Position numbers and translations under genes: made by a program
Notes under the pieces: model-generated
Databases searched by the model: none
What the model was told of the DNA's origin: nothing
Seen by the model: the letters and a program-made list of their open reading frames with translations, nothing else
Part shown: piece by piece, positions 35,156 through 63,515 of the stretch
How the letters are laid out: each line of letters opens with the position of its first letter
How positions within the stretch are numbered: position 1 is the first letter of the stretch
Assembly: GCF_020745735.1 (NCBI RefSeq)
Contig: NW_026867487.1
Location: 3,906,001 to 3,970,000, forward strand
Source of the DNA: Hemiscyllium ocellatum
Lineage: Eukaryota
Direction: 5' to 3'
DNA length: 64,000 nucleotides

Positions 35156-35595
35156 ATTTATTGTACGATGCTTTCACCCTTTTCCAGCTCGATAAGACTC
35201 ATTATACCACAATAGAATGCAGTGTTAGACAAAAGCACCTTCGAGATTGTCAATGCGTACGATTTTTTGTCTGCTGCGGGCATCAGAAAACCAGGTCGGA
35301 GCGAAATCACCTTAAATGCATTGGTGCCAGTCGTGTACCTCTGGAGGTCGAACTCGGGCTGCCTATCTGGGTACTGACGGTACCAGAAAAAGTAATAAGC
35401 AGCGCCAGTGCCTGTGCAGTTTAACGTGAAATCCTCCCTCTCTGTCTGTGTGAGAGAAGGATTGTGCTGCTTGACAGAATCCCCAACGCTCAGATCTGGA
35501 GCACAGTGTTTAGTAAACTCTTGTGCAGTTGGCGAAAGTTCGCAGTCATATTCCTGGAAATGTCGATAGGAAGTAGGGCCAAAAGAAAATCTCAT
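35156..35595 (-). pseudogene. TCR alpha/delta V, open V exon but defective leader and RSS (family C)
   Basis: Exon from 35495: DLSVGDSVKQ...FTLNC...YFFWYRQYPDRQPEF...DKKSYALTISKVLLSNTAFYCG. The leader has no GT donor. The nonamer-like ACAATAAAT (35164-35156) has no recognisable heptamer 23 nt away. Confidence 0.88.
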
Positions 35596-37342: not shown

Positions 37343-37901
37343 ATGAAAATTTGACTTGTCTTGCTACTCATCATTATCTATCTTTTCACAAGTAATTTCG
37401 TTTGCCAGCAAAACTCAATTTCCCTCACTTCAGAGGCTTGTAGCATTGGTGATTCTATTAATAAAAGAACGTTGAAGATAATCACAATTCTTGATTCCCC
37501 CCCCAACCTACGCCCAACGGATCACCCCCGCCACCCCCCCACCCCCCCCCCCCCCCCCCCCATCAATAGCACGGAGCCAGCAGGGCAAAGCGAAATTGCC
37601 TGGTCCTGATATGGCAGTTAAAGTGGGAATTAATGTCGAGTAACATGCAACTTGAAGACGTACAATTCTATCGCTCAAGTTTGCTAGTACAGTCAGCAAC
37701 CACAGCACCATCTATAATATGTTTACTTGATTGCAGAACTTATGGCAAACAGAAATTACGACTCCCCGATCCATTCTCTGTCGAATTGGATAAAATTACG
37801 AAGATAACCAAGTTTGCGACCAACAAGACTGTCACCTTCACCAGTGAGGTGAACTTATGTGCAATAGGTGGCACTGATGCAGTAGATTCCATACAAAAAA
37901 A
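37343..37901 (+). pseudogene. V pseudogene (family D, related to the 19 kb V)
   Basis: Leader 37343-37391 MKI*LVLLLIIIYLFT with a GT donor. A poly-C tract lies in the intron. The exon from 37570 reads ...MAVKVGINV/VTCNLKTYNSIAQVC*YSQQPQHHL*Y...LPDPFSVELDK...LCAIG. The RSS is shortened: CACTG... at 37872 and ACAAAAAAA at 37893-37901. Confidence 0.8.
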
Positions 37902-39844
37902 TAAAACTCATTTACAATTACACTTGAGAGTCAATTTTCTATATTTGTGTATTTAGTAAAAACGGATTTCATTGTTGTAACGGAAAAATCCATGGCTCTC
38001 TTTGAGGAGATTGTCCTGAGATTTTGCCAAACTTGGGAGTTATTGACCCAGCGATAAGTTAAATCCATTTAAAATTCCCGAGTTATCAGCTGAAATGCCA
38101 TTTATAACCTCTCCTCCAAGTCACTCATCATTCTGACAAGGAAATATGTTCCAATTGCATCTGTGTCACAGAGTCAAAATGTCGCAACTCCCTTCAACAC
38201 AACATCCTGGTATCCTCATACACGAACGGAAGCAGCAGTTCAAAGACACTGCTCACCGCACTTTTTCCGTGGCAATTAGGCATAGACATGAAATGTTGGC
38301 CGAGTCAGCGTCACCCATATTCTATAGATGAATCTTTACAAATATAAATGCATCTTTTTATATCGCCATTTCTTCTGGAAAACTGAACCACCTGTCCTCA
38401 GTCCCTATGTTTCAATTCGGAGCATTTCTCTTTACTGGCTGGCGGTTCATCCCTCTCGGTCTCACAGACCTATTCAGGGTACTAGGCAGCGAGCTGAGAG
38501 TATCCTGAGATAGGATGGCAGATGATTGAGTTTCGCGAGTCGAACCAGTGCTTTCAAATATCCAAGTTCCATATAGAGAGGGAACAGGGCAATGCTGCTG
38601 CTTGGAGTCTGGGTACTATGTTGATCAATTATGATTTGTAATTATGCATCAAAGACATTCCATTTTCTTCTTTCATTTTGCGGAAGTGATCTGAACCTAA
38701 ATTTGAAATATCCTTCTGTCAGATAAGTTCCTTATTGAACATTCTTGTCAGAAATGGTTCATGGACATGCTGTGACTCTGCCGCTGTCTTCAGACAGAAG
38801 GAGATCTCTTCCCATGATAGCATCTGGAGGGACAATTATTTAATGTGGTCCCGGCAACATCCAATCTTCCATAGTTAATTTTAGGGAAGCAATTGAGAAA
38901 TTCAGATTATCAAGCAAATTTGCTCAATTTTGTTTCTCTGCCGAGTTCCAGGCAGCGAATGCATTTAAAGCAAACACATAAACTGCGATAGGAATGGGCG
39001 GAAAATAGAAATGTAATGTTTTGTGTCCAGGGGTCCTTGTTCAAAATAAATTCTCAACCTCGTTTGGACTGAAGATTATTGAATCTCCAGTGAGTTACTG
39101 ATCTCTTAGACTCATAGTGATGGACAACGGACTGAACAAAGTAAAATATTCGTTTATGATTCAGATTGTAATATACTGCATATCATGAAGTTGAATTACA
39201 ATTAACCAGATCTCTGTTTCTGTTCACCTGAACCTCTCATATTTATTATTGGAATCGCCAAATCTTCTGAATATCACCCTTCTGACCCCTCTTTCAGCTT
39301 TGTTAATTTGGTTGCTTTTGTTTTCATTGCACATGGTTGTCATAATCTGATATATTGCAGTTTACCTTGCACAGTAACGTTTTCAGCAGGTACATTTTTA
39401 GACCCTGTCTCGGATTATGGAATAATTGTATCTGACAAAGTTTTCCTCGACAACTTATTTGTCCATATTCAAGACTTGTAGGCTTCTCAGATTTCATATT
39501 ACAGTGGGTAGACTCCTGGTCTTATAAGCAAGTTACGGTTAATTGAATTTCACTGGTGCAACCCCTGCGTTATAGGCTGCATTTGATGCAAAAGTGAGCA
39601 TTTCAGGTCTCTTGTTAAACAATATTAATATAATTCTACATCTTTTGAACGTTGAGTCTTATCTGTTTGATATTATTACTTTTGTATTCCTGTTTGTCCC
39701 TCCAGGAACCTTAGGAATACAAGAAGCAACTGAAGTTATAAATGCTCTAGTGTGGCAGACTGAAGGAGGCGAGGCAGTATAAAAGGCAGAATGAGGAGGA
39801 AGGAGCGGCGTCATAACAATGGCAGAGAAGTGGTTGAATGCTTT

Positions 39845-40664: not shown

Positions 40665-40950
40665 GTGGAATGGTGGCTCAGCAGCTAGCACTGCTCTCTC
40701 AAAGCACGAGGGTCCCAGATTCAATTCCAGCCTCGGGCGACTGTTTGCTTGGAACTTGTGCATTCTTCCCGTGTCCGTGTGTGTTTCCTCCCACAATCCA
40801 AAGTTGTGCAGGTCAGGTGCATTATCCATGCGAAATTGCCCACAGTATTAGTCAAAAGAAAGTGGGTCTGGATGGGCTACTCTTTAAGGGTCAGTGCGAA
40901 CTAGTTGGGCCGAAGGGCTGTTTCCACACTGTAGAGAATCTAATCTAATC
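40665..40950 (+). mobile_element. HE1-type SINE, older copy
   Basis: Diverged homologue of 1336-1640 with the same (TAATC)n tail. Confidence 0.85.
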
Positions 40951-41459
40951 AAAGTGCTCTGGGGAGAGGAAGGAAAGGGGAGTTGATGATCAACAGATCA
41001 GACACAATCTTCTTTTGCTCCTAGGTTTTGTGATCTTATTATGATGATGCATACCGAACCTGAGTATGGATGTCAAGTTAGAAGTGACAGAGGACAATTG
41101 TGATGTGGAGAACAGCAATATGAAGCTTTAACTGCTGCATAAGTGTTTATTCCATACTTCCTTGCCTGTCAGTCTCTGTGATGCAATTATTCAGCGTGTA
41201 TAGCTGCCATCCATGCAGGGATGATGTCTTCTTTGTCTATGCATGGCAACTTCGACTGTCATGTACACCAACAAACATTGGTTTCTGAAGACAGTTCCCT
41301 CTTTATCCTATAATCTCTGGTTTTCTCCTGAGGTTCACGGGGATGTCGTTTTGGGCAGCACCACGGTTATTCGTTTCTGTGTTCTGTCATTCCTCTGAAC
41401 ATCGATCCTAAATGCTCAGTGATGTAAAATTCAAAACGTATGAGACTTCACATCTCTTG

Positions 41460-41680: not shown

Positions 41681-43034
41681 TGATCAGATCACTTCCCTCA
41701 GTGAGTGCAATGACAGGAGAATGTTTGGAAGTAAAGTGTACCCTTGCCAAATAGGAGTGAGACAAACTGTTGCCAGATGCGTACACAGTCAAGTTATATA
41801 TTGCATCACTAGCTGTGTTGCGAATGTTTCAGAATTGTTACCAGCTAAAACTTTGCCCATATGAAAATGCTGGGATAAAAATAGTTCTCAAAATTCAAGA
41901 GGAGATTGTTAAAGTCGGTATATTTGAGTAGAGACTGTTTAATAACTCAATATTCATTAGTAAATAAGCAGAGAATGACTGAAACGTTCATTGAGAAAGT
42001 TTTAAACATACATTGCACGAGTCCTTGTCTCAATCGTCATTACTTTGCATCGTTTTTGTATTTTTATTAGACTACATGCATATTCCTTTATTTATTTTGT
42101 CTCAGTTTACCGAGCACGAGACTAAGCCTTGCTTATTATTACATGGAACCAAATATTTACTTTATGGTTTTTTTTCTCCATTGCGTTCAGCTGTATCTCA
42201 GTTATTGTTGTATTCGATAATATATAATTCAATGTCCCATTGTACATGTCTCATTCAGTAGTGTTTTCTGTTCAAGCTGAATATATTTTGCAGCGCAATG
42301 ATTCTTGTGTTAAGGACACTACCATTTCAGCACAAGAGCATGATACTATAAATCAAGGTCATGTTTCAGTTATCAATTTATCTGATGTTGTCTCTGTTTA
42401 CATTACACCAAGCCATTAACATTTGTCAACACATCAGGATTCTATGAGAACCTCCGACGTTTGGTTGACTTTATTGATTTTATGTTTTAGCAGAACAAAT
42501 GAATGCTCTTCAGTGTCTACATGGCTCAGTATTTGCAAGTAACAGATCCCCCCTTAGATGCCTTCCTTATTATGTTAAAATAGATTTATAACAGCTCAAC
42601 CATGGATAAGTGAACTCAAATAATATAAGGAATAATGTAAGAAATCAGAAAGCAAAATCCAAAAAAAAGCATGAACTAAATAGATGATAGGATCTCGAGA
42701 TATTTTAAACATGCTGTAACAATGGGTGATGGTCTTAAGTTCGAGATAGTGTCTCAGAAGAGTTTTAAGTCAGGAATGCCACGTGTGGTGAGAGTTAAAT
42801 ACATCCATTGCAGCCAACAGGTTGCCTTTTTTTAAATTTGCGTAGTTCCATGAGCAATGTTACAAATCAAAGCTAAGAGTTATTACATTTACTGACAGAA
42901 CTGCGCCTGAAGTGCATGTTCTAATTAATTGCCCCTCTGGAGACTCTCAGTTACAAAAGATAAGGGACACCTTGAATGCGTCTCAGAGCTGAAGTCTCGA
43001 CATTCAGTAATCCATTCAATCGCTGAAAACAAAG

Positions 43035-45104
43035 ATGCATGGGCCAGCAAATGGGCTGTTCTTTGCAATTTTCTATCCAGTTCTCGCTCTTATTGGTGTC
43101 CCCGGTGAGAAATCTATTCCAACAGAGTTATGTTTTTATTCTTCATAACAATTTGATCTTTTCCTTCAGAATCTGACTAAATATCAGCAACATCCAATAT
43201 GTTGTCTGTAAAATGGACTTCAACCAGGTTCCAATGTGTTATCACAATATGTTAGATTGCATTCTGTCATGTGTTTGCATTACGTGAAAATGCACTATGG
43301 ATTACAAAATTATATTATTCTCTATATTTCGGGACTATTTTATAACGTCATTTTTTATTATACATGCTAAATATTTCGTTAGTTTATACGTTTTAATTTT
43401 ATTCATATTCAATTATAACGCATTCAGGTACATTTCAGCACATTTAATATGCTGTGCAGTAGTACTATCAAATTTCATGAATATTTATTATTAACAGTGT
43501 GATCTTAAGAATTAGTGAAAAAGTCGCAAGAAGTAATTGCTGTTGAAAGATTTTAAATCATTTTACATTTTGAGTGATCCTGATAGATTTTGTACATTTT
43601 GCTTATACTTTGAATAATTCAATGTTTGCATCCATTGTGGACGTGTGTTTCGCTGGTCAATATCACATGGAATGATCTCTTTTAGTTTGTAGTAGAAACA
43701 ATAGCTTTCCAGTTGTGTCTCTCGTCAGTGCAATAGGTAAAATGGGGATGCATCAGAGGTGATGTAACACATTAATTTGATAGAGGGACACACGAAGAAA
43801 TATTTGCAAGTCAGTTTTAGAGATTACTAAAACCATGCTTTGTAAGACAGAGAGGCCAAGTAGGTCAGTGAGCTGAGAATTTGTGGATGAATTGGACTTG
43901 CAATGCTTAAATCAATGAGCACCATATATTTAGAATGAGCTTCAATTGGATACTTAGATTTAGGTATTGTCTCAGTAGTCAGAGAATAGAACGTGGAGCT
44001 GAGAAGATTGCAGTGACTCTTGTATCAAGAAATGTTTAATGCAGCAATGGATATCGAGCTATTGCCAACAATTTTGAAATAGTCTGAATTTGAGTCTGTG
44101 TGTGAGCGTGGGTTCTTTCTGTGCCAGATTGCATACAGTTGCTGTTTTGCGTTTGGAGTTTGTTTCCTACTATGTGTCACTTTCTTTTTTCATCTTCCAT
44201 AGCAAATGTGTTGGCGATTATTATTTTATCCCAACGATACTGTGGTCTCTCCCAATGCATCACGTATTACCTACTGGCGATAGTGGTGGCTGATTTCTTA
44301 GTTATCATCACTGGGTGTATCCTAAACAGGATTGGACGCATCTATTTTAGCTACAGTGTTATGTCCACCACCCCGGGCTGCAGCCTCACTGCTGTGCTGA
44401 TCTACGCCACGCGGGATTGCTCCGTCTGGCTGACAGTGGCTTTCACCTTTGACCGTTTTGTGGCCATCTGCTGCCAGAATCTTAAGAAACGATACTGTAC
44501 AAAGAAAACTGCTTTACGAGTCATAGGGCTCATCTGTGTCCTGTTCTGCATTAAAAACGCCCCTTTATACTTCATCTATAAGCCCATGTATATACTCGAT
44601 GCAGTGCCCTGGTTCTGTGATATCAAGGCGATCTTCCACACTTCGCCCACTTGGCAGGTCTACCGATATTTAAACAAAATATTAATCCCTTTTCTTCCTT
44701 TGTTCCTCATTGTGCTGCTCAACGCCCTCACTGTAAGGCACATCATAATGGCTAACAGAGCCCGCAAGAGACTCTGTAGAGTCGGGAATGATGTAGACTC
44801 AGAGATGGTGAACCGCAAGAGATCTATTATTCTGCTCTTTTCCATTTCTCTCAGTTTCCTCCTCTTGTGGGGAACTTATATCGTACGTTTTCTGCATAGA
44901 ATGGTTACCGGTGAAGAGTACGTTGGCAAACGGAACTTCAGTGATCCCAAGTACATCCTTCAAGAGACAACCAATATGCTAACCTTACTCAGCTCCTGCA
45001 ACAACATCTTCATCTAAGTGGTGTCACAGAACATGTTCCGGGAAGAACTCAAGAAAATACTGATGTGTCCCTTCCAAATATTCACTGCCAGCACAAAACA
45101 GTAG
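43035..45104 (+). CDS. Two-exon class A GPCR, GPR139/GPR142-like, with one premature stop in TM7
   Basis: Exon 1, 43035-43104: MHGPANGLFFAIFYPVLALIGVP with a GTGAGA donor. Exon 2 from 44203 (phase 1 AG): ANVLAIIIL...ADFL...VAFTFDRFVAICC...SSCNNIFI*. The TAA is at 45015-45017, giving 294 aa. The frame continues for 28 codons to TAG at 45102-45104. Confidence 0.9.
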
Positions 45105-45544
45105 AAAAGAAAAAGTGCAGAACATCTGACCAGTACTTCCCTTTGGTGCGTGTTATTAGATGTGTAGCACCATCTCCCAGAATTAACCATTCGCGGTTTC
45201 AGATCCGCTCGAGAACCGTGAGAGTTATTCTCCAATGCGAGTAGTTGCCTTTTGCCAGCTGAAAAGGATTTGAATATCTGACTGTCTGTTATAGATGCTT
45301 ACTCAAGGCTTGGGTCTATTGGCTTAGATAGCATGTGAAATCGTATTCTTTACTATTTCAACTGAACAGAGATTTCAGTCGACAATCCTCGTCAATCGTT
45401 ATCCCTCGTGTCATAACAATGAGGTCAGTTTTATTCTAATACGTGTAAATCTCTACTTTTTAAATCTTACACTGCTCCTTTGCTGCTATTGTTTGCACTA
45501 AATGATTGGAAAGTCCACAAATGTTTGAAAAGTACTTAATTGAT

Positions 45545-45625
45545 CAATCCTTCCTTCGTTCCTTCCTTCTTTCCTTCCTTCCTTCCTTTCTCTCATCCTT
45601 CATTCTTCTCTCCATTCCTTTCCAT
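45545..45625. repeat. (TTCC)n microsatellite, paralogous to 54835-54895
   Basis: Both copies share the interruption CCTTCCTTCGTT. Confidence 0.85.
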
Positions 45626-47354
45626 TACATGGCATTTTTCTCATTGTGAACGAAATAGCACTGTGCAATTAACAGACGGTTCCTTTAGAGGACCGGGGAT
45701 ACAAATCATAACCAACTGGTTTCCTCCTTTGATGCATTGTTTATATAAATGCGATTCGAACTCTCTGATCAGCCCAAAGATCGTGCATACACCAGGATCA
45801 AGATTGATGGTGCAGTCAGATAAAGTGATGTGGTATGACGCATCAGCCATGGTTTGATGGAATAGGAAAGAAAGTTCAAATAAACACACAAGACATAAAC
45901 GATCACACACATGTGCATGTTCTACTGCAATGCGAATAGAGTCAGAACGGTTGAACAGTGATAAACACACGTATAAGAATAAATAATTCTTGAACAGTTG
46001 TTTGTAATGTTCTTTCTGTTCCTGTTCGTTGCAAAGGTTTAAATTGGTCTAAAAAATTGCATACATTTTTCATTCTAACTGACGAGTATGTGTCGAGAAA
46101 AGAAATTTCCACCTTTTTCTTCTCTGAAATATATTTACAGTTTTAGGTACTTAGCTACTTGGCACTTAATGAAACGGGTTTACTTATACTTCCTTAAAAA
46201 TACATTCTATGATTGGAAACTCATCTCTCATGTTTTGGAACATTTTGGAACATTTCCAACTGTGTCAGAAGGGGTCCAAATGTTCAAATCATTGTTTAGG
46301 ACCAGTGGTTCGATTGATCTATCTAAATTTCCACGGTAACTCCAAATTTCTACTTAACGTTTCTGAAAGATGAGTTCTCGAAACTGGTGCGCATTGTTGA
46401 ATATTGTCCTCAACAGTCGCATATTTAAGGTATTTATGTGTTGTATTTATGTGTTCTATATACTGAGTTCCTTTTGAGTAAGCTCAATTCTTTAACGATC
46501 TATGAGCATCAGCCACTTGCTCCCTTATGTTAGGGCCTCCAATTCATTCTTAAATGTCTTATTTAAAAGAGCTTTTCAAATAAATTGGTATGTATTTCTT
46601 AGCTCTATTCATGCTGCATCAGAAGGCATCTTGGTTTTCAATTTTGTGAGATGAACTGAGATGATGATCTTTCGTCTTCCTTTATTTTATTACATCCTTT
46701 TTTTTCATTTCATGATTCTTTACATCATTCACTCCTGTAACTGTGCGCGTATTCTTAATGTGCCATTCCAGCCACATTCTAACACGTTCAGGTGATACTG
46801 GTTGTCCAAAACAGTATTCAACTCTTGAACAGTATCTTTTGAAGAGAAGTAGCCATTTGCTGTGTGGAGAAATTGGCCAAAAGCAAATATGAGTTTTGTG
46901 GATATTTGCATTTTCATCTCATTCATTTGAAGGGAAATTAAAAATAATTCAAAGAGAAGGAAACGCATAAATGATGGGGATGTATGATTTCATGTCCATT
47001 GTGTTTTCATGGATATTCTCATAAAAATGCTTTTCAATTTACTGGACAACTCTACCTGACAACTTTATAATGTTTTTCTTCATTGCTGGCCGGCGGCCCT
47101 GTCCGGCCTAAATAATGCAGGGCTTTCGTGAAACCATGACAGAGCATGGTCTTTCGTTGACTGCTGTGTATGTATAGTTGCAAACAGGAATGGATGCCCT
47201 GTCGAAGTTTTCCAGGGATGCTATTATTCAGCTTAAGGTTCCTGTGCTGAGAGTGAGAGAGAAAAAAAGTAGTGTTTTTACGTTTATAACCAGTAGTTGA
47301 TCGCATAGAAACCGAATGGAAATCGTACCAGTTGGAGTAATCGAGTCACAGTGA

Positions 47355-48300
47355 TGTACAGAAATGAGACAGAACCTTCGTTTCAACTCACCTATGCCAA
47401 CAACGGATCCTACAGAAATCTGGTCCCATATGCAAACATTTGGCTCGGTTCCCTCCAAACCGTTCCTATTCATATTGCTACCCAGATGTCAATTACAGAT
47501 AAGTGTTTCAGATTCCATCCCTTCCTCTGGCAGATCATTACACAGACGCAACACAATCTGCATGATAAAGGTTTCCCTTAGATTGCTTACGAATCTTTCC
47601 CCTCTCACTTTCAAACTATGCCTTCTATTTTTGCACTCAACTCGAGCAGGGAATGGGCATTATCTATTTATGCCAGCCGTTCCACTCATGATTTTCCAAA
47701 TCTCCAGTTGGGCGAAATGTCTGTTTCCATCCTGCACATCTCTGTGCATGACACGGCCGCCTCCGACACTCTAGGGAACATAGGCCCAGACGATTCAAAC
47801 TCTTCCTATAGGTCAAACTGTCCAACCCTGTCAACATCTTTGTAAATCTTTTCTGAATCTTTCCAACTTTCGCAACGTCCTGCATATCGATATTTAAGGG
47901 ATTTTTCTTTCTGTAGAACGGATGGACTGAGTTTCAACTGATAAGTGTAAACTGTTTTTAATCCTGTTTCTAACAAACTGAATGGAACGTCCGAAAAGGG
48001 AAAAAAACGACATTCGTCACTCACTGCTTTTGAGACTAATAATCCTATACCCAATCCAAAGTTAGAGAGCTTAATCTTGGCGAGGCCCAACTTGGTAAGG
48101 ACAAGATACCAAGTTTTTCTTCATTGCTGGCCAATGACCCTGAAATCATATCCATTTAGACAAAATAGTTTTAGTAGAGACATGAACACTTGTGGGATGT
48201 TTACCCAACCCCTCCCCCAGCCCCACCTCCCCAAGAACATGTCCAGCTGATCGATGAAAACTGTACTTGTTATTTTGTTAAAGGCAAGTGCAAGACTCTG
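47355..48300 (-). mobile_element. CR1-type LINE 3' fragments
   Basis: ORF track reads VGKIQKRFTKMLTGLDSLTYRKSLNRLGLCSLECRR. A second 3'-end remnant lies at about 48060-48290. Confidence 0.75.
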
Positions 48301-48533
48301 CGATGCAGATGTGACTCTATGGACAAAACTACTGGGCTTGAAGTGAAACACATAATATTCTTATACCAGAATTAAACTGCAAACATAAAACGAAAAAAAT
48401 GCATCAACTAACTTTATCAAAATACGACAATATTTGACATCAATTGTTCCAATATAACGGAATCCCATCAACACAAACTTGGCAAAATTGAGAAGGACAG
48501 TGTTACCTCCGCCAGTGGGGGGGAAAGGGAAAA

Positions 48534-48667
48534 NNNNNNNNNNNNNNNNNNNNNNNNNNNNNNNNNNNNNNNNNNNNNNNNNNNNNNNNNNNNNNNNNNN
48601 NNNNNNNNNNNNNNNNNNNNNNNNNNNNNNNNNNNNNNNNNNNNNNNNNNNNNNNNNNNNNNNNNNN
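48534..48667. other. Assembly gap (N run)
   Basis: Direct reading. Confidence 1.
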
Positions 48668-49469
48668 GCGCGCAACTTCACCTCCAAAATACCAATTTCA
48701 ACAGCTGAAGGAAAAATAAAACGGTGGGGCTCAGTGAGGCTGACATCTCCAACCATTTTTCTCCTGTTAAAAATAAACTAACTCTGCTTTCAATGGAGTA
48801 AGCAACTCTGTATGAACTTTTTTTTAAAAAACCCTTCACAGGAAAATGTGGACAGAACAAATCCGTAATAAAGACACACCTCATCTCTCTCCAAATGTTA
48901 AATGACATTACAACGATTGAAAATATTTAGATTTAAAATAGGCTTCAGATAATTAAGAATAAACATGCAAGAAAGTAATCAAGTGATTTCGGACCGACGC
49001 TATCAGGAAGTGTGAAATATCTCAAATAACAAGCCTTTGACCATGGATAGATTATTGTTGGGCAAGTTGAAAAGTGCTGGTAAGTGATTTTGTTCACTAA
49101 TGAATCTTATTCTGTGAAGCAAAATAACAGAGCAAGTTTTCTCCGCCCCATCAATTTTTGGAAAATGATGTTGTGCTTATTGCGCAGAACATTTCAATTC
49201 TGTGGTGTCAACATGTTCACTTTAAAAGCTCTCTGCTGCTGGTGACATCATTACTTTAAGTTATCAATATTCAGCGTTCTGTCAATTTTCAGCTTTCCTG
49301 CAATACACAATTCACTACTGGCATTAGTCCTCAGGACAGGTTCCGAAATACCTGCTCCAGAGACGCAATTCAAAATAGTCGAATAAGCAAAGTATTTCTG
49401 GGGGACGAAATTTTGCTATTGTTGAATTCTGACCATATTCAACTTCTTTGTTGTTCTGGTGTTCACGAT

Positions 49470-49714
49470 GCTTGCCCTCTACTGGCTAAACGTCTCCAAT
49501 GTACAACTGAGGAAATGATCTCCACTACTCTGTACTGAGTCGGCGTTCAGCACAATGCTGCAGAGCATGGAGAGAGATGTAAAAGCATCTGAACATTATA
49601 GACATTACAAGTACACAGGGGTATAATGCACAGAGACTTTTGGACAACAAAAATCTTAATAATGTGCGATTACAGACATAGTAAATGAGGCACGGAAAGA
49701 GACAGACAAAAACT
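49470..49714 (+). pseudogene. V relic with RSS, between the two GPCR genes
   Basis: AKRLQCTTEEMISTTLY* (Cys at 49500, Trp as TGA) and a 3' end TAA TAA TGT GCG ATT ACA GA. RSS is CATAGTA (49677-49683), 22 nt, ACAAAAACT (49706-49714). GTGACATCA lies upstream at 49242-49250. Confidence 0.5.
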
Positions 49715-49759
49715 TAAACAAAAGCAGGATTTATCTTTTAGTTTCGTGTGCAAGATTGG

Positions 49760-50030
49760 CGTCATTACATGGCCATTATTTATTGCCGTTGAAAAGGTGA
49801 AGTTGAACTGCGTTTTTGAACTGCTCCAGTCCATCTTTTGTGGGCTGACCCATGATGCATTTAGGCCGGGATTTCTCCTAAGTTGAAACGGAAATTGCAA
49901 TAGCTTGCTGGGGCAATAGCAGCTGATCATATTCCAGTCACGTGCTAACGTTGTGCTTCGAGATGGAATCTTTGTGCTTGCAGAGTGCTGTTGAGGTTCC
50001 TTTGTGAATTTCTGCAGTGAATCATGTAAA
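49760..50030 (-). pseudogene. Possible V relic, convergent with the previous one
   Basis: ORF track reads QKFTKEP...ISCYCPSKLLQF...SSKTQFNFTFSTAINN, loosely FR1/FR2/FR3-like. No convincing RSS. Confidence 0.33.
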
Positions 50031-51353
50031 CAATACACACTGTTACTTAGCACCGTGGTAATGTCACTGACGGAGCAATAAAGAACAGCAGGTTAATCCT
50101 CAGAGGTCATTATTTCCACCATTGGAACTGGAAGAGATGGAAATCATTAGTAAATAGTCTGGAATGTTAGCTTCTCAATGATCTAGCTGAATACTATAAA
50201 AGACTCGATGGAGAGAGTGGCCGACCTTTGTCGCTACACCTTATAACCTAATGAACTTGAAAGTATGTTTGAAAGTTAATTTCCTCAAGGCCCTGGTAAT
50301 TGGACTGTGATCATTTGTTCGCAATAATTGGATGTAAAGCTGTGTGAGAGAACCTTTTACACATCACCTTTGAATTGATGGTGGTCTCGCCATGTAGGCA
50401 TTTGAATGTAAAGGGAGGAATGGACCACCAGCATACTGTGTTTAAACTGACCAGGATGGAAATATGACAATTTGTGGACAAATAGTGATTATAGTGATGT
50501 CTTCCAGATCTCTCCAATTCGTAAACAATCTACTTTATTCAAGTCGCCAGACATTATTTTAAGATAAACTTGCTGGTTCTAAACTATAAGTTTAATTTTC
50601 ACATTTCTGATTAACAAATATACGGAGCATACTGAAATCATTGAAATCATTTGAATCAGCAAATGGAAAGGCCTTAATTTCTTAGTTCCCTTGTCTTCGC
50701 TCTCTGCACCATTACATCTCACCCTGTTCAAGCTTTTTGAACTGAATGTGACTGTGGATTCCGGTAATAAACCATTACAGTTTTCATGGCGTTGTGTTTT
50801 TCTTTCCCGTTGATTGGACAACAACTGCTTGAATGAAACTGCAAATGTTTTGTGGAGAACGTTGTGAGGAAGGGAAGAACGAACAGAAATGGCATTTCTT
50901 GTGTTCACTTCACACTCATTCCCATCGATCAATTCGAGAATTAACATGTTTTCTGGGATTTAGTTGTGAAAAATGTAATTGTTACTAATGTCACTGAATG
51001 TACTAAGAATTCTCACGCTTGAAAACACGAAATGATTAAGAAAGCAACAAAAATGTGATGGGGCTGGATTAGGTTAAAGGGAAAACTTCAGTCAGCATCT
51101 ACCATCACAAAGAACATTTATTGATGTTTAATAAAGGTATGATTTTTGTGAAGGTCACAGAGCATTCGTCATTTACAAACAACATGTTGTTACTCACCTT
51201 CTGATGTTTGTTTGTTCATTGAAATGTGAATAAATTCTTTGTTGTAGCTTAGTTTCCCTCCGGACTTTCTGCTGCAGAATAACTTAGTAATGTTTTGAGC
51301 CTGTCGCAGAATTTCAGTGCGCAACGTGAAGTCTTCCATTCTGTTCTAATAGC

Positions 51354-54332
51354 AGGCACGGCCCAGCGAATGCCCCTTCTATGCAATTTACTACCCCATT
51401 CTCGCTGTTATTGGCATCACGGATAAGTGATAGGTCTAAATCAAGTGCATTGAATTTATTCTATCAAGATTCAGAGAATATAATTCTTCTTTTTTCCCCA
51501 GCTCACCACACACTGACTGCATGGGATATCAAACGAACTCTTTAATATGCATGCATCATATATAATATTTGAAGATATTAAATCATTGTTCTTCTTTAGA
51601 TTATCTGGAATTGCGATGTTGTATTACAAAAATATGCTGCACAATGAAAGAAAAAGTGTGTACTTAAGGTCCAAAATATTAATTGCATTTTATGTCTCTC
51701 ATGAAATTTAATCGGTTATATTTATGATTCATTTTTTGAATTCGAATTTTTTCACATGCCTTCTGATACTTGAGTGTTTAGATGGAAGCTCAGTGCATAC
51801 CTTTGTCACAAATGCAGTTACAGTCAGAGAGTTTTTTGAGTTTTGAAAGATTAATTATCAGCAAACAACATCATCTCAGATACAGATGTGCATCCAGAAA
51901 TTATGGTAATCTACAGCATGAAATCTGGAAGGGAATAGTTACATTCTACTGCGTGAATACTATTATATTCATAATGTGGACTATAATAGTCTGGATACAT
52001 TAAGAACATCTTTGGAGTAAAGTAAGAAACGTGAGTGATAGGTGAGCAGTAATTATTCATCTACAATGCTCATGTTTTATTGTATAAGTGGATTTTTACT
52101 TGTACTTCGACGTATTTCCAATCTTTGACTCTCCCTACTTTGCACTTGATGATATGTGTGGGGCACTTCAGGCTTTGTTTTCTTGAAACACTGGAATACG
52201 TCCAGTAGAAATGATATGCAGCTGGGTTAAAAAAACCATCACTGAAAAACATAGAAATATCAGTGAACACTGCAAAAACCTTGACCCAAGAGACGAGCAT
52301 AGTGAAGTAGAATGGACATACCATACTGTTGTGTACAGACATTCTGTGAGTCGGTAGTTCATTGCTAACATACGTTCAATCGATAGATTAATCTCAGGAA
52401 TACACATAAAGTCAGAATTGGAAATAGACTAAGATCTCATGATAGTTTACATTTTTGTAGGGTCAGGTGCACTGAAACAGTAGAGACAAATGAAAACATG
52501 AAAGATGACAACAAGATACTGGACGTAAAGGGAGATGTTACCACACCACGAGAAAATGTAATTCAGTGAGGGTAGACATGATGAATGAGCAAGACTTGGT
52601 TTTGACATATACAAGAAATGTTTGATTTTCAGATGAACTTAAGTCATTTAAGAATGTAAAATGGAGCACAATCCGACAAAAAAAATGTCAAAACTGCTGT
52701 GAGTTTATACTCGCCATAATTTAGCCAAATCATAGACTTGCATGATCATTAGATGGGGACGACTGATGGTGGCATCAGCTGAGGGTCACCACGTCCCAGA
52801 CGAGGGCAGAGGTTGAGAAGGAATTAACCTCAACCAGTGTGCGAATCTCACTCACTTGGTGGTATCTTCTGCATTGAACCCGTCCATCCAGTCAACTCAG
52901 CTAGCTGCACTATGGTTGTTAAATACCAGTATTATTGTTTCATGCTGTGCAAGGTATAATGAGACATTGACCTCATTTCGTGCTGTTTTAGGATGTTATA
53001 ATCATATAGTTTTGTTGCTTGTGACCCATAAATTTAATTGGAAAAATACTCGTCATACAGNNNNNNNNNNNNNNNNNNNNNNNNNNNNNNNNNNNNNNNN
53101 NNNNNNNNNNNNNNNNNNNNNNNNNNNNNNNNNNNNNNNNNNNNNNNNNNNNNNNNNNNNNNNNNNNNNNNNNNNNNNNNNNNNNNNNNNNNNNNNNNNC
53201 TCAGTGAACAGTGGAGCAGTAAAGGATTTCAATGTCAATGATCTTGGTAAATGTTTAATCCAGTGCTGGAAGTCGAATAAGTAACACTGGTGTTGATAAC
53301 TGGCCTCTTCAGGTGCTGATTGAAGGACCAGAATACTTAGAATAACAGGTTTCAGAAAGTGACTGCTTAGGAACTGGTGTTTAGAGCTGGCTTAATAACA
53401 TCTCAGCCTTTCCATCTCTGGCAGCTAACTTGATGGCGATCATAAACCTAGCATGAGGGCGGTGCAGTCTTTTGCGTTGTATCACAAGTTACCTGGTGGC
53501 AATAGCAGCGGCTGATTTCCTTGTCATTATTACTGCCGTGATTCTCAACAGGATTGGACGTATTTTTTCCAGCTATAGCTTCCTTTCTACCACATGTGGA
53601 TGCACCATTACTGCTGTCCTGGTGTATGTCAGCCAGGATGGCTCAGTCTGGTTGACAGTGGCCTTCACCACTGACCATTTTGTAGTCATCTGCTGCCAAA
53701 GCTTTAAGATGAGATACTGCAATGAGAAAACTGCGACACTGGTCATTGGAATTGTCTCCTCCCTCAGTTGTATTAAAAACATCCCTATTTTCTTCATGTA
53801 TAAGCCCTTGTATAGACTGGATGGTTTTTCTTGGTTCTGTGACATAAGGTCTGTCTTTTACACGTCACTCGTCTGGAAAAGCTATGATTGGTTGGATCGA
53901 ATATTAACTCCATTTCTCCCGTTTCTCCTTATTCTATTGCTTCACACCCTCACCATCAGATATATATTAGCAGTAAGTGCAGCACGCAAGAGACTGTGAG
54001 GTGCTGAGAGTGGTTCAGATTCAGAGATAGCCAACCATAAGAGATCCATTGTTTTGCTTTTTGCCATTTCGCTCAGCTTCCTCCTTCTATAGGTCACGTA
54101 CGTTATACATTTTATCTACGTAAGGGTTAGAGGAGAGGGCTACTTGAACACCCTTGATTTCACCGACCCTTGATTTCAGTACATCCTTCAAGAAACTACA
54201 ATGATACTTCAGTTACGCAGTTCCTACAACAATGTGCTCATCTATGCCGTATCTCAGGCCTAATTCCGACAGGAGTTGAAATATTTGATACTCTTTCCCT
54301 TCACTACTGTTATTGGACGCTTCAAGTGGTGA
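51354..54332 (+). pseudogene. GPR139/GPR142-like GPCR pseudogene, tandem paralogue of 43035-45104
   Basis: Exon 1 at 51354-51422 has ATG changed to AGG, a 1-nt deletion and the donor GT changed to AT (…FYAIYYPILAVIGIT). Exon 2 from 53425 has stops at 53454, 53997 and several later positions, DHF in place of DRF, and ends NNVLIYAVSQA*FRQELK...W* at 54332. Confidence 0.9.
53061..53199. other. Assembly gap (N run) in the GPCR pseudogene intron
   Basis: Direct reading. Confidence 1.
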
Positions 54333-55479
54333 AAATGAACGAATTTGTTTTCATGTTTTAAATTTGACAGTACTCTCTCTGACAGCACTTTCTCACCTAT
54401 TTAAGTCAGAAATACTGTGTTCAAGTTTCCTAATTTGGGGAATGTGTGACTCATTCTCAAATTGTCACAGTCCACTGTTTCGAAAACTGCAAGAGTATTG
54501 GACCACCAGATTTGAGAATCCTGTATAAGATGCCAAAACACATTTTGCACCCACCCTTTCAGCTGCCATAATAAACACGAATTTTTATCGATGGCAGACG
54601 GCAAATATTTCACTGTTTCCACTGGAAAGGCTTTTGGCAATAATTCACTCTTGGCACTGAATCCCATCTCTTGCTGCTGTATCTCATTGAATTTGTGGAA
54701 TACATCTCTGTGCAAACGTGTAACTGCAATCCCTGATTTAATCACAACATTATTAAATTGATGTTACTACATTGTAGGCGTTCATGAAATCACGAAGGCA
54801 TTGTATAAAGGTCTGTTTTCTGAAGTCCCTCTCATCCTTCCTTCCTTCGTTTCTTCCTTCCTTCATTCATTCTTTCTTTCCTTCCTTTCACTCCTACTTC
54901 ATTTACTTAGTTCCACTTTTATTCTTCATCCTGCCTTAATTCCCGTTTTTCCATTTCTTTATTTCAACCTTTCACTTTGCTTTTTTTTATTTTTGTTTCC
55001 TCTTTTTCCTTAATACTAAGATAATTTGACTTAATTCTCGAATATGCACAGATCATGACACAGGTAATTGCATTCATTAAATCCGTATTGATAAGTCAAA
55101 CTTTGACATGGTCACGTTTTCTCCCGGTGTAAGAAGATTTTCATTCCGACCTCCCTATTCTTGAAATGCAGACATGAATAAACAATGAGTCAGTACATGA
55201 ATCAAGAAGAATGACTATTGTGAGATTGGTATGCAGATTATCCGAAAAATGTGCAGAGCAGTCCGCTATCCATCTTGCAAAATAGCTTATTTCACAAGTT
55301 ATTGTTATGCATCAGAGATAGAGTGTAAGGTTTGCTCAGAGGCGTCAATTAAAATCGTTAAATAGATTCTCTGTCTGTATAACTCAATGTGTTGAGCTCT
55401 CTGTCACCTAAATCAGAGCTAAGTGTATTCCAGATGTTCAACCAAGGTAATATGTTGCCCATAATCTAGCAGCAGCTTC

Positions 55480-56730
55480 CTATTGCATGTACTGAGGGGG
55501 ATGCTTAACCACCAGAGATTTCATCTGTCTATGATGAATATCTGGCACCCGAAATGGTTTGTAAAACATTATGGCAAATGCGTTTTGATCTCTCAATGTC
55601 ACGTGCCATCATTACATGTGGGGAAACCTCCCATTGTGTACGTGGCAGGTACTCATGCGATTCAGCCAACGTTGTCTATCTTAAATGCTGCAGGCAAAAA
55701 TGCCCTGAGGCATTGTTCATTCTCGAGACCAAGCAAAGACATTCGAATGAATGGACGCCACTCAACAATCGTCAGAAGCGTTCCCTCCCAGTTGGTGAAC
55801 ATTTCGACCTCCGACCATCGGGTGATCGTGCTCCAAGGCGGACTTTGGGACAGGCAACAACGTAAAGTGCTCGAGCCAAAGCTGATTGCAAAGGTTAGTA
55901 CCCATGAGAATGGCCTCAACTCACACGGTGGGTTCATGTCACAGTACAAGTGACCCCTCTGCATTACACACACACAAACACAAACACAAAAGACCAACAC
56001 ACAGACGCACCTACACATGCACACTCCGACACACAATCCGACAGACGCATGAACTCACGCAGACCCTCTCTCATACGCTCAAACATACACTCCCATACTC
56101 ACACACATGCACATCCTGTCACACACTAATACACCTTTACTACCACTCTCTCTCTCACACGCACACACCCTGTCACAGACATTCATAACTGCCAAACACA
56201 CATGTGTATACCCACATATAAGCTTGTAGGGTGAATTTGTACTTGCAGATTTCTATATTAGTTTGCACAAAAACTGCATTAATCAATGTAAGATTATGTA
56301 AATTTGTTTAAAAAAAAGATTAGAGTCAGCCTGAACATTGTGGCACAGACAATCTCACACAGTACACCTCACAGCTTAAATGCATTATTTGGGCCAACAT
56401 GACACCAATTGTTAACGAGCACTTGAGAATGTAACTTTAAAAAAGTTCTGAGACTTACATATGAAAGAACTGAAACAAACATGTTATTCTAAAACATAAG
56501 AGACTTAACAAAGAGTCCAGGTTTCTTTCGATACATAAGTTTGTTTGATTCACACTGTACACTTTTGCTGTACGTTCTGTGTCTTATGAACTTATACTCC
56601 ACAACTTCCTGATGAAGGAACAGCACTCCGAAAGCTAGTTGTTCCAAATAAACCTGCTTGACAATAATTTCATGTTGTGTGATTTTAAACTTTGTACACA
56701 TCAATTCAACACCAGCATGTTCAAATCAGT
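55480..56730 (+). mobile_element. Penelope-like element 3' portion: GIY-YIG endonuclease, CA-rich tract and 3' repeat (second family)
   Basis: VRGRYSCDSANVVYL...CPEALFILETKQR, LPVGEHF, VIVLQGGL...EPKLIAK...GLN in shifting frames. CA-rich low-complexity DNA lies at about 55965-56215, and the 3' repeat matches the 26.4-26.7 kb copies. Confidence 0.88.
56601..56642 (+). ncRNA. Minimal hammerhead ribozyme motif
   Basis: CTGATGA (56609-56615), A, GGAACAGCACTCC, GAAA (56630-56633), GC, TA. The core is intact, helix II is reduced to 3 bp, and helix I is possible only as ACAAC/GTTGT with a bulge. Confidence 0.5.
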
Positions 56731-56746
56731 CCATCCTGATGGGCTT

Positions 56747-57348
56747 ACATGCTTACTTCAAGTAACTGGTGTACAAGTACATCGAGGATTCGTGCACACT
56801 TCACTCTTTTGAAATGCATGTACATGTTTAAGAATGGTGCCTTTCAAGACTACTTTAATCTCAGGGGGCTGTTCAAAGAGTTTGGCATTAGGTTTCCTGG
56901 GCAAAAAAACATGAAGTGATTGCAATACACAATTTAATGGCATGAAATGACTTGCAATAGTACTCCAAATTGGTTAAGAAATCAATAATTACCTCATTTA
57001 TAAATTTGTTAAAATACTTGGTTACATTAGAATCATTAACAATTATCCTCTCAACAGTAAAACTAATGCATAAATTAATCTGATGCAAACAACAGGGAAA
57101 GACTGGTAAAGTGGCACACATGGTAATGTTATCTTGGATTTCGGACCTCATCATTAGTTTCACTTTCGGGGTCAATCACTTCATGTTTTTTACCCAGGAA
57201 ACCTAATGCCAAACTCTTTGAACAGCCCCCTGAGATTAAAGTAGTCTTGAAAGGCACCATTCTTAAACATGTGCATGCATTTCAAAAGAGTGAAGTGTGT
57301 ACGAATCCTCGATGTACTTGGACACCAGTTACTTGAAGTAAGCCATGT
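56747..57348. repeat. Long inverted repeat: about 176-bp arms around a 250-bp spacer
   Basis: 56747-56922 is the reverse complement of 57173-57348 with about 5-6 differences. Confidence 0.92.
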
Positions 57349-57774
57349 TTTGTGAGGCACAGGCAACACATGCTTTGTAGTAAGCCAATGGGTCACAACG
57401 ATGTGCATCATATTGACACATGAACGAGTTCAGTTTTAATTAATGTCATCCAGGGTTTTGCATTTGTCAACATTTGTTATTTGGTTGCCATTTTCAGCAA
57501 ACCCAAAAGCGGATGGTATTCCAAAGTTCTGGACAGGTGCTCCACTGATGCATAAAAAGAAATTCCTGTGATTTTTCTCATGATTTAAGAACTCGCAACA
57601 GGACCAGGATTGCAAGAGGCTGTAAAAGCTTGGGCTTTTTTTTTGTGCCTGGAGCACGCAAGCCGTGATGAGTTCTTGTCGATGTTCACCAGATAGGGTG
57701 AATAGACATGGTAATTTTTTTCCAGAATGTATGGGAGCCCGAAAAGGAAGGGCATGGATTTGCAATGAAAACGT

Positions 57775-58085
57775 ATAAATGGATGTAGGCTTGCTCCAGA
57801 GTGGAAGGTTCATGTTCAGACGTTTCATCACCATTCTAGTTAACATCTTCAGTGAAACTCCAGACAAATAATTGCTGATGATTTCTGCTTTCTATTTATA
57901 TGCTTGGGTTGGTGATGTCATTTCCTATGATGATGGCATTTCCTGTTCTTTTTCACAGGGGGTGGTAAATCTGGTCCAAGTTATTGTGTTTGTTGATACA
58001 GTTCCGGTTGGAATGCCATGCTTCGAGGAATTCTCGTGCGTGTCTCTGTTTGGCTTGTCCTAGGATGGATGTGTTGTCCCAATTG
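57775..58085 (-). mobile_element. Penelope-like element 3' end (same family as 34458-34812) with hammerhead motif
   Basis: NWDNTSILGQAKQRHAREFLEAWHSNRNCINKH. The hammerhead at 57856-57815 reads TTCA-CTGAAGA-T-GTTAAC-TAGAAT-GGTGAT-GAAA-C-GTC-TGAA. Confidence 0.85.
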
Positions 58086-60975: not shown

Positions 60976-61039
60976 GTACGCATTCCTGCAACTGCAGTAA
61001 TTTGGTTCAGAAATGGAATTCTCAAAATCATTTGCTGAC

Positions 61040-61420: not shown

Positions 61421-61469
61421 GGGGCCAGACCGCTTCAGTTTCTCCAGCTTGTTGGTTTTAGCGGTATGA

Positions 61470-61488: not shown

Positions 61489-61507
61489 CTAGGTGCAACT
61501 CCTAACT

Positions 61508-62029
61508 TTGATTTCTGGCGTCCTCTCAGTCTCTTCAGTAACGTGGGATCCATGAAAGACAGATACACCGTGCTGTGTTGGAAAAGAAAATCGCCGATTT
61601 TTAAAGCAGTTATTTTGTTTAACTTCTACAAATTGACAGAGTGCCATCCCGGTAAAGCTGGAGACTTCTTTTTACCTCCTCGCCTTCCCCACCTTCCCAT
61701 TGCATAACGCAACTCCCTCAGCATTCGTGCTATATGTCTTAAATGAATATCCTGGAACTTGCCGCAGTTTCAGGATGTAACAGAACAGATTGGAGTGTTC
61801 TATGTAGTCAAGTATGGTCAGTGAAAGTTTGCACCGATTCTCTCTAGGACCAATAATTCAGATTGGATTTGAAACACAGAATCTTTGCCGTTCATTTCTT
61901 TAATGCAGATAGAAACTCTCTCTAAATTGCAGCAATAAATTGAATAACTGGACGATTCACTTATTATTTTAAAACAGATTCGCCAGACAACAGGAAGATC
62001 GTTGTCAGTAATGAAATTCGAAAGTACAT
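61508..62029 (-). pseudogene. TCR alpha/delta V pseudogene (family B)
   Basis: Leader 62029-61984 MYFRISLLTTIFLLS with a GC donor. The exon from 61897 reads MNGKDSVFQIQSELLVLE...FH*, then NLFCYIL, then NKITALKIGDFLFQHSTVYL. RSS is CACGTTA (61545-61539), 22 nt, AGAAATCAA (61516-61508). Confidence 0.8.
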
Positions 62030-63044: not shown

Positions 63045-63515
63045 ATGATGTTAAAACACGAGAACAACATATTCCCCGTTCAAGTTCTGATATTCTTGAT
63101 ATTGTGTGAGTTTATTTTTTTAAGTAGTCACCTTGTGTTACCAATCTCTCGGAACCTTCTGGCGGCTGAGTGGCGTTTCTTTTCTTTTTTACAGCAGTTC
63201 AGTGTGAGGCTGAGAGTTTACAGGCTGATCAGGTTGTGTGTCGGGAAGACAACCGAGTTGAACTTACTTGCCGACTCTCCATCGTTTCTGGCTGTTCTGT
63301 GTCCTGCTACAGGCAGACACTGACAGAGACTCCGAAATAAATCGGTTCCCTTCACCAGGGGAACCAGGCAATAGGTCGCGGCACATTGTCTTTTAACAGA
63401 GTGATGAAGTTCAACACCATGTCTATAAATGACACCGTGATTGAGAACGCTGGAATGTATTACAGTGCGAAGTAAACGCAGTGAGATGAAGTGCGGATTC
63501 GGCTGTACAATATCT
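63045..63515 (+). pseudogene. V pseudogene, paralogue of the 8.8-9.2 kb V (family A)
   Basis: Leader 63045-63105 (61 nt, GTGAGT donor). The exon from 63195 reads VQCEAESLQADQVVCREDNRVELTC...SCYRQTL...K*...NAGMYYSAK*, with Trp as TGC, TAA at 63338 and Cys as AGT. RSS is CGCAGTG (63477-63483), 23 nt, ACAATATCT (63507-63515). Confidence 0.9.

What the first reader, a model, noticed from the sequence alone, without database searches (positions are those of the whole stretch)
43035..54332. Tandem GPR139/142-like GPCR genes interleaved with TCR V segments
Seen: two homologous two-exon 7TM genes share the same phase-1 intron after IGVP/IGIT and a downstream (TTCC)n with the same CGTT interruption. 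They lie between V pseudogenes at 37 kb and 61 kb, with V relics between them at 49.4-50.0 kb. Established: unrelated genes are embedded in or flank other antigen-receptor loci (trypsinogens in TRB, olfactory receptors next to mammalian TRA/D). Inference: the GPCRs duplicated together with V segments, would be deleted or inverted by V(D)J recombination in T cells, and might share lymphoid regulation. I am not aware of this arrangement being described, but cannot check.
Basis: partly seen in the sequence, partly recalled or inferred. Interest (0 to 1): 0.7.

Follow-up and report, generated by a model that had tools for sequence, protein, structure and literature searches.

The report
Dead GPCR copies in shark TCR array
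Two copies of a shark-expanded orphan receptor gene do lie among T-cell-receptor V segments, but one is long dead and the other carries a confirmed stop codon, so this looks like gene debris in a duplication-prone region and not a working link between the two systems.

Summary
Two homologous two-exon class-A GPCR copies lie on the + strand at 43035-45104 and about 51353-54332. They share a phase-1 intron and a (TCCT)n array about 450-500 bp past their natural stops. V pseudogenes flank them at 35.2, 37.6, 61.5-61.9 and 63.2 kb.

Neither copy is an intact gene. Copy 2 has no ATG, a frameshift, a broken splice donor and five internal stops. Copy 1 has one TAA replacing the conserved TM7 tyrosine. 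Contigs from two further samples carry that TAA, and no other allele appeared in four runs.

The copies are old paralogues, 68% identical in nucleotides and not sisters in the tree. The window holds no duplicated block, so duplication together with V segments is not supported here.

The 49-kb "V relics" are inconclusive. Both gaps lie in non-coding DNA. The GPCR/V interleaving does not depend on them; the adjacency of the two copies does.

The family is a large elasmobranch expansion (over 1,200 hits) that databases label "GPR139", to which it is only distantly related. I found no paper on this arrangement. This scan had already noted it on other DNA of the same genome (s1-193324, s1-195848).

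Expression, shared regulation and synteny in other species could not be tested.

The parts
43035..43104 (+). GPCR copy 1, exon 1 (ATG, 23 codons plus 1 base, phase 1; donor GT at 43105-43106)
   Evidence: Sequence read. It matches residues 1-24 of annotated family members at 62-79% identity.
44203..45104 (+). GPCR copy 1, exon 2. The 7TM body is open to a premature TAA at 45015-45017, which replaces the conserved TM7 tyrosine. The frame then continues undamaged to the family's normal stop at 45102-45104.
   Evidence: Pfam 7tm_1 at E 1.4e-18. 89% identity to P0001. Stop position. The TAA stretch is present without differences in contigs of runs X3 and X5.
45548..45588 (+). (TCCT)n array with CCTTCGTT, 444 bp after copy 1's natural stop
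   Evidence: It is one of only two such arrays in the window.
51353..51420 (+). GPCR copy 2, exon 1 relic (ATG changed to AGG, 1-nt deletion, donor GT changed to GA)
   Evidence: (z 18.8 against copy 1 exon 1).
53425..54332 (+). GPCR copy 2, exon 2 pseudogene. It has in-frame stops at 53454, 53997, 54090, 54171 and 54261, DRF changed to DHF, and 7 departures at 61 conserved family columns.
   Evidence: (85% to P0067).
54835..54887 (+). (TCCT)n array with CCTTCGTT, 503 bp after copy 2's natural stop
35203..35553 (-). V segment with an open V exon but no recognisable RSS heptamer; probably a pseudogene
   Evidence: Pfam V-set at 27.2 bits. Sequence.
37572..37908 (+). V pseudogene of the same family as the V at 19.4 kb, with a decayed RSS
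   Evidence: Local DNA alignment score 119, z 23.7. Not detected by Pfam.
49309..50090 (+). Possible V relics (FR2-like motif at 49.31-49.40 kb; FR1-like motif and RSS-like remnant at 49.79-50.09 kb); inconclusive
61525..61889 (-). Decayed V pseudogene related to the V at 15.9 kb, interrupted by insertions
   Evidence: Local DNA alignment z 7.1, 0 of 200 shuffles reached it.
63215..63472 (+). V pseudogene (internal stop; Cys changed to Ser in YYSAK) related to the V at 8.8 kb
48534..48667 (.). Assembly gap in intergenic DNA between the two GPCR copies
   Evidence: Continuity not tested.
53061..53199 (.). Assembly gap inside copy 2's intron
   Evidence: The right flank is collinear with copy 1's intron.

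Best explanation
These are two disabled members of a very large family of orphan class-A GPCRs. The family is restricted to, or greatly expanded in, sharks and rays, and databases auto-name its members "probable GPR139". The two copies lie in the same orientation inside a decayed stretch of a shark TCR alpha/delta V-segment array.

Copy 2 is an old pseudogene. Copy 1 was inactivated recently by a single nonsense mutation at the TM7 tyrosine. This truncates the receptor within TM7 and removes helix 8 and the tail, so no working receptor is expected (this last step is inferred, not shown).

The two copies are ancient paralogues. They ended up among V segments, or stayed there, through the birth-and-death turnover typical of both gene families. 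Nothing here indicates that the receptor family and the TCR locus work together.
For: Family identity: Pfam 7tm_1; 1,237 hits at E<=0.001, the best 120 at 51-89% identity and nearly all from elasmobranchs.
Disabling lesions.
The TAA is real: contigs of X3 (44951-45062) and X5 (44950-45065) match with no differences, and no alternative letter appears at 45015-45017 in four runs.
Copy 1 died recently: only 3 of 61 conserved columns depart (family median 1, maximum 6), and the 28 codons after the stop are still open and family-like.
Copy 2 died long ago: 7 of 61 departures plus 5 internal stops, and a terminal branch of 0.10 against 0.032 for its sister P0067.
The copies are old paralogues: they are not sisters, and each sits in its own clade with 100% SH-aLRT support.
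Setting in a V array: intact V segments at 8.8 and 15.9 kb, and V pseudogenes at 19.4, 29.6, 35.3, 37.6, 61.7 and 63.3 kb.
No duplicated block in the window. No RNA run holds the gene.
Against: Copy 1 is so nearly intact that a truncated product, or an intact allele elsewhere in the population, cannot be excluded. Contigs can drop rare variants, and only two samples besides the assembly demonstrably cover the site.
The absence of RNA evidence is weak, because few RNA runs were available.
The matching (TCCT)n arrays show that some 3' flank has been inherited or maintained, and I cannot explain that.
Earlier notes of this scan report V and GPCR copied together on other DNA of this genome. I did not verify this. 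If true, co-duplication may hold elsewhere in the array.
Confidence: 0.8

Rival explanations
1. Copy 1 is still a functional or polymorphic gene. Either the TAA is a segregating null allele, or a receptor truncated at TM7 retains some role, for example as a dominant-negative partner or decoy.
For: Everything else in copy 1 is intact: ATG, canonical GT-AG intron, DRF motif and only 3 of 61 conserved-column departures. The post-stop frame is still open to the family's usual stop.
Against: The TAA is present in the assembly and in contigs of two further samples, and no alternative allele appeared in four runs. The lost tyrosine is at least 95% conserved in the 120 relatives. No RNA run holds the gene. 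That class-A GPCRs need TM7 and helix 8 for folding and coupling is established knowledge and was not tested here.
Confidence: 0.1
2. The GPCRs and V segments form a co-amplified cassette with a functional link: shared lymphoid enhancers or chromatin, and somatic deletion in T cells.
For: Same-strand GPCR copies lie between V segments. Earlier scan notes s1-193324 and s1-195848 report the same theme, with block duplications, on other DNA of this genome; I did not verify them.
Against: In this window the copies are 68% identical, are not sisters, and share almost no flanking sequence. There is no duplicated block. The neighbouring V segments belong to different V families. Both GPCRs and all V segments between 35 and 64 kb are disabled. 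There is no expression evidence.
Confidence: 0.05
3. This is an assembly artefact: misjoins at the two gaps placed GPCR-bearing pieces next to V-bearing pieces.
For: Two sized gaps (134 and 139 N) lie between copy 1 and copy 2 and inside copy 2's intron. Continuity across them was not tested.
Against: Each gap-free block carries both kinds of gene. Block 11748-48533 holds V segments and copy 1. Block 53200-64000 holds copy 2's exon 2 and two V segments. Copy 2's exon 1 and exon 2 lie in the right order and on the right strand across gap 2. The right flank of that gap is collinear with copy 1's intron. Independent runs reproduce 42900-48500 in contigs with no joints.
Confidence: 0.03

Closest known systems
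Elasmobranch expansion of 'probable GPR139' orphan class-A GPCRs (database annotation only; I found no paper describing it)
   Same: Both copies are 60-89% identical to annotated members. They share the two-exon structure, with a 23-residue first exon and a phase-1 intron, and the family motifs DRF and CNNxxIY.
   Different: Both copies here are disabled. Most listed relatives are intact models of about 323 residues.
Human GPR139 (solved structures 7VUG and 9M42)
   Same: GPR139 is the only solved structure hit by the family profile at E<=1e-10 (3.3e-12, 49.4 bits). Both are rhodopsin-class receptors with a very short N-terminus.
   Different: The similarity is distant. With copy 1 alone, neuromedin-U receptor 2 scores higher (36.7 against 31.6 bits). 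GPR139 is a single conserved gene, whereas this family has hundreds to thousands of copies, so it is not an orthologue.
Unrelated genes embedded in or beside antigen-receptor loci: trypsinogen genes in TRB, olfactory-receptor genes at the V end of mammalian TRA/TRD, ADAM6 in IGH (from my own knowledge, not checked here)
   Same: Non-immune genes sit between or beside rearranging V segments, so distal V rearrangement would remove or invert them. The mammalian TRA/TRD neighbours are also class-A GPCRs.
   Different: The copies here are pseudogenes of a different GPCR family. Conservation of the arrangement across species could not be tested.
Shark TRA/TRD V array with IgH-like V segments (TAILV) and NAR-TCR cassettes (PMC12227049 discusses the linkage)
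   Same: The window is part of such an array: it has TCR-alpha-type V segments and a divergent V family ending in CAK.
   Different: In its main text that paper does not mention GPCR genes in the locus.

Membership tests
Elasmobranch-expanded GPR139-labelled class-A GPCR family | Rhodopsin-type 7TM domain | tested here: met
   Pfam PF00001: copy 1 at 67.7 bits, copy 2's longest open piece at 36.1 bits.
Elasmobranch-expanded GPR139-labelled class-A GPCR family | High identity to many annotated members, and placement inside the family tree | tested here: met
   1,237 hits; 89% to P0001 and 85% to P0067. Both copies nest in clades with 100% support.
Elasmobranch-expanded GPR139-labelled class-A GPCR family | Two coding exons with a phase-1 intron after about 23 residues (...IG.P) | tested here: met
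Elasmobranch-expanded GPR139-labelled class-A GPCR family | Intact reading frame (a functional member) | tested here: not met
   Copy 1 has TAA at 45015. Copy 2 has no ATG, a frameshift, a broken donor and 5 internal stops.
GPR139 / GPR142 orthologue | GPR139 or GPR142 is the closest characterised receptor, with a one-to-one relationship | tested here: inconclusive
   The family profile hits only GPR139 among solved structures, but copy 1 alone scores higher on NMUR2. More than 1,200 paralogues argue against orthology. I built no tree with true GPR139 or GPR142 sequences.
Non-antigen-receptor gene embedded in an antigen-receptor V array | Lies between V segments of one array on uninterrupted sequence | tested here: met
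   Copy 1 shares gap-free block 11748-48533 with V segments at 15.9, 19.4, 29.6, 35.3 and 37.6 kb. Copy 2's exon 2 shares block 53200-64000 with V segments at 61.7 and 63.3 kb.
Non-antigen-receptor gene embedded in an antigen-receptor V array | Arrangement conserved at the orthologous locus of other species | not testable with these tools
   No DNA or neighbouring genes were returned for P0001, P0067 or P0002. A search with a V segment found nothing.
TCR V gene segment (the claimed relics at 49.4-50.0 kb) | Detectable V-set homology with framework motifs and an RSS in the right order | tested here: inconclusive
   No hit from Pfam or the V HMM. DNA z 3.5-4.8, but within the empirical background. 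Motifs are suggestive only.

The most novel reading that the evidence does not exclude
The shark-expanded GPR139-labelled receptor family has been amplified partly by riding on the segmental duplications of the TCR alpha/delta V array. Intact members elsewhere in the array would then be somatically deleted or inverted in T cells, or share the locus's chromatin regulation. That would be a previously undescribed coupling of a large orphan receptor repertoire to an antigen-receptor locus. This window would be a decayed remnant of it.
Probability: 0.07. Interest if true: 0.7.

Novelty: new member of a known kind. Interest (0 to 1): 0.25.

Why it matters
This is mainly a correction. What looked like two receptor genes coupled to a TCR locus is one old pseudogene and one recent one, lying in a stretch where the V segments are also decayed.

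It adds one more instance to a pattern this scan has already noted in the same genome, of GPR139-labelled GPCR copies scattered through the TRA/TRD V array. I found no paper describing that pattern. It is worth a sentence in any description of elasmobranch TCR loci or of this orphan GPCR expansion.

Copy 1 is a cleanly dated, single-hit pseudogene, so it could serve as a neutral comparator for selection tests on the family. This window offers no evidence of a functional link.

Tried and rejected
- Orthologous loci. The look-up of encoding contigs for P0001 (Hemiscyllium), P0067 (C. plagiosum) and P0002 (C. punctatum) returned no DNA and no neighbouring genes, so synteny could not be tested.
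- V segment search. Searching the protein database with the intact V at 15.9 kb, hoping to use contig lengths as a linkage fingerprint, found nothing.
- Earlier findings by sequence: blank.
- RSS pattern. An exact CACAGTG-N12/23-ACAAAAACC search gave 0 matches; the RSSs here are degenerate.
- Pfam on the V relics at 37.6, 49.7 and 61.7 kb gave no hits. The DNA alignments were more sensitive.
- Pfam on seven intergenic ORFs between and after the copies, and Rfam on 36-64 kb, gave nothing.
- Literature. Five searches and one paper read found no description of the family or the arrangement. That paper's supplements are not held.
- Recent local tandem duplication was rejected.
- Sequencing error as the cause of the TAA was rejected.
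- Steps deliberately not run. I did not run the big representative-protein search, because the family scans left nothing open. 
- My first tblastn used an out-of-frame query by mistake. It was redone properly.
Full report
**What is there.**
The window is vertebrate DNA of about 40% GC, from a T-cell-receptor V-segment array. Two intact-looking V exons lie on the minus strand at 8805-9116 and 15857-16234. Their Pfam V-set scores are 27.7 and 63.4 bits. Around them are V pseudogenes on both strands, at about 10.1, 13.4, 19.4, 22.0, 29.6, 35.3, 37.6, 61.7 and 63.3 kb.

Earlier notes of this scan call the genome epaulette shark and place the window more than 400 kb inside a TRA/TRD V array. I did not verify the species directly. 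However, tree distances to Hemiscyllium and Chiloscyllium proteins (0.13-0.14) are in the range of hemiscylliid orthologue pairs, which fits.

**The two GPCR copies.**
- **Copy 1.** Exon 1 is 43035-43104. It reads ATG plus 23 codons plus one base and ends IGVP, followed by donor GTGAG. After a 1,098-nt intron with a good pyrimidine tract and AG, exon 2 runs from 44203.
- **Copy 2.** Its exon 1 relic lies at about 51353-51420 and ends IGIT plus G. Exon 2 runs from 53425 to 54332.
- **Family match.** Both second exons match Pfam 7tm_1 and align with each other over 784 bp at 68% identity. Both first exons match residues 1-24 of annotated family members, so the shared phase-1 intron is real. A proper tblastn with six family proteins found no third copy in the window.
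- **How I searched.** I searched the exons separately by reference and did not build a joined spliced protein. Pieces were never read through stops in the tools. In scripts, stops were written as X.

**Neither copy is intact.**
- **Copy 2** has AGG where copy 1 has ATG, a 1-nt deletion in exon 1 and GA in place of the donor GT. It has in-frame stops at 53454, 53997, 54090, 54171 and 54261, and DRF has become DHF. It departs from the consensus at 7 of the 61 columns that are at least 95% conserved among 120 relatives. Its terminal branch is three times as long as that of its sister P0067. It is an old pseudogene.
- **Copy 1** has a single lesion. TAA at 45015-45017 replaces the tyrosine of the TM7 motif, which is CNNIFIY in the family. 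All six aligned homologues carry Tyr or Phe there and continue for about 28 more residues.
- Downstream of the TAA the frame is still open and family-like, reading VVSQNMFREELKK..., up to the usual stop at 45102-45104. Only 3 of 61 conserved columns depart, against a family median of 1 and a maximum of 6. The inactivation is therefore recent.

**The stop codon is not an assembly error.**
Contigs from public runs of the same organism were laid on 42900-48500. Runs X3 and X5, from different samples, each have a contig covering 44950-45065 with no differences. No alternative letter was reported at 45015-45017 in any of four runs. Contigs can drop rare variants, so a rare intact allele is not excluded. 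No run on record as RNA holds the gene, which is only weak negative evidence.

**What family is it?**
- Copy 1's exon 2 finds 1,237 proteins at E<=0.001. The best 120 are nearly all from sharks, rays and skates and are named "probable G-protein coupled receptor 139". A scattering of other automatic names (GPR15-like, galanin receptor 2a-like, FMRFamide receptor-like) shows how loose the naming is.
- Against solved structures, copy 1 alone scores slightly higher on neuromedin-U receptor 2 (36.7 bits) than on GPR139 (31.6 bits).
- A seven-sequence family profile hits only GPR139 at E<=1e-10 (3.3e-12, 49.4 bits).
- So GPR139 is the nearest characterised relative but a distant one, and the family is not an orthologue of it. 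I did not build a tree with true GPR139 or GPR142 sequences.

**Relationship of the two copies.**
In an 82-row maximum-likelihood tree, copy 1 sits in a clade with 100% support. Its partners there are P0001 (Hemiscyllium), and P0003 and P0002 (C. punctatum). Copy 2 is sister to P0067 (C. plagiosum), also with 100% support. Several supported nodes separate the two copies. They are old paralogues, not a recent local tandem duplication.

Apart from the exons I found almost no similarity between their introns or flanks. There are two exceptions:
- A short intron stretch, 43979-44057 against 53201-53276 (z 5.0), at the same distance from the acceptor in both copies.
- The downstream (TCCT)n arrays. 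These are the only two such arrays in the 64 kb. They lie 444 and 503 bp after the two natural stops, on the gene strand, and both carry CCTTCGTT. Chance is an unlikely explanation for that placement, so the array is probably an inherited 3' feature of the gene unit. I cannot say what it does.

**V segments around and between the copies.**
Positions 37572-37908 align with the V at 19.4 kb through the Cys-Ala codons into an RSS remnant (score 119, z 23.7).
- The one at 61 kb is real too. Positions 61525-61889 on the minus strand align over the full length of the V at 15.9 kb (z 7.1).
- The V at 35.2-35.5 kb has an open exon but no recognisable heptamer. The V at 63.2 kb has a stop and has lost the second cysteine. 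Every V between 35 and 64 kb therefore looks dead.
- The claimed relics at 49.4-50.0 kb are inconclusive. The motifs are suggestive. But Pfam and a V HMM built from the window see nothing there, and the DNA scores are matched by many other places in an empirical scan.

**Gaps.**
- Both gaps are in non-coding DNA: 48534-48667 between the copies and 53061-53199 in copy 2's intron. No reading frame depends on them.
- Across gap 2 the order and strand are right (exon 1, then the 3' part of the intron, then exon 2). The right flank is collinear with copy 1's intron.
- The interleaving of GPCRs with V segments does not depend on either gap, because each gap-free block carries both kinds of element. 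Only the adjacency of copy 1 and copy 2 does.
- I did not test physical continuity, and I did not look up or fill the gap letters.

- **Co-duplication with V segments.** It is not supported in this window. There is no duplicated block, the neighbouring V segments belong to different families, and the GPCR copies are ancient paralogues.
- **Deletion or inversion by V(D)J recombination.** This follows from position for any DNA inside a V array, and it has no consequence for dead genes. I could not tell on which side D-J-C lies.
- **Shared lymphoid regulation.** There is no evidence for it.

**Novelty.**
I found no paper describing either the family or its presence in a TCR locus. A 2025 paper that maps the elasmobranch TCR alpha/delta linkage group, including epaulette shark, does not mention GPCRs in its main text.

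The scan itself has already reported the same arrangement on other DNA of this genome (s1-193324 with a follow-up, and s1-195848). It has also reported the family many times. This window is therefore one more instance, and a decayed one.

Unrelated genes inside antigen-receptor loci are a known kind of arrangement. Examples are trypsinogens in TRB, olfactory receptors beside mammalian TRA/TRD, and ADAM6 in IGH; these come from my own knowledge and were not checked here.

**Verdict.**
Interest is low to moderate.

Noticed in passing
window:47762-47948: Contig depth is about 90,000 in runs X1 and X5, against about 30 on either side, so this is a very high-copy repeat. The minus-strand ORF 47664-47885 carries an LGLCSLECRRR-type motif and has no Pfam hit.
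   Followed up: partly
window:56747-57348: Inverted repeat arms 56747-56922 and 57173-57348 are 96.6% identical over 177 bp. This looks like a young element of about 600 bp with terminal inverted repeats, similar to a MITE.
   Followed up: no
window:26505-26742: A self-complementary palindrome of 242 bp, 83% between arms. Part of it recurs at 56610-56728.
   Followed up: no
window:1334-1641, 3618-3944, 40670-40953: Three copies of one repeat family of about 300 bp, 70-84% identical, two of them in inverted orientation.
   Followed up: no
window:35203-35553 (-): The V exon has an open frame and a Pfam V-set hit (27.2 bits), but there is no recognisable RSS heptamer after the Cys codon, and FR3 is one residue short before the Cys (SNTAFYC).
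   Followed up: partly
window:44139-44202 compared with protein P0001: The N-terminus of the annotated Hemiscyllium protein P0001 is collinear with the 3' end of copy 1's intron. That database model probably reads intron as coding and misses the true first exon.
   Followed up: partly
window:45548-45588 and 54835-54887: The only two (TCCT)n arrays in the window both lie 444-503 bp after the natural stops of the two GPCR copies and share CCTTCGTT, even though the copies are old paralogues. Unexplained; possibly a 3' feature of the family.
   Followed up: partly
window:8805-9116 (-) and 63045-63515 (+): A divergent V family ending in CAK/SAK, with one intact member and one pseudogene, about 70% identical in nucleotides and in opposite orientation 54 kb apart. 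Other notes of this scan also flagged it.
   Followed up: partly
window:44396-44582: Summed contig depth rises 5- to 6-fold over the TM3/DRF part of copy 1 in all four runs. This is consistent with many near-identical paralogous stretches elsewhere in the genome.
   Followed up: no
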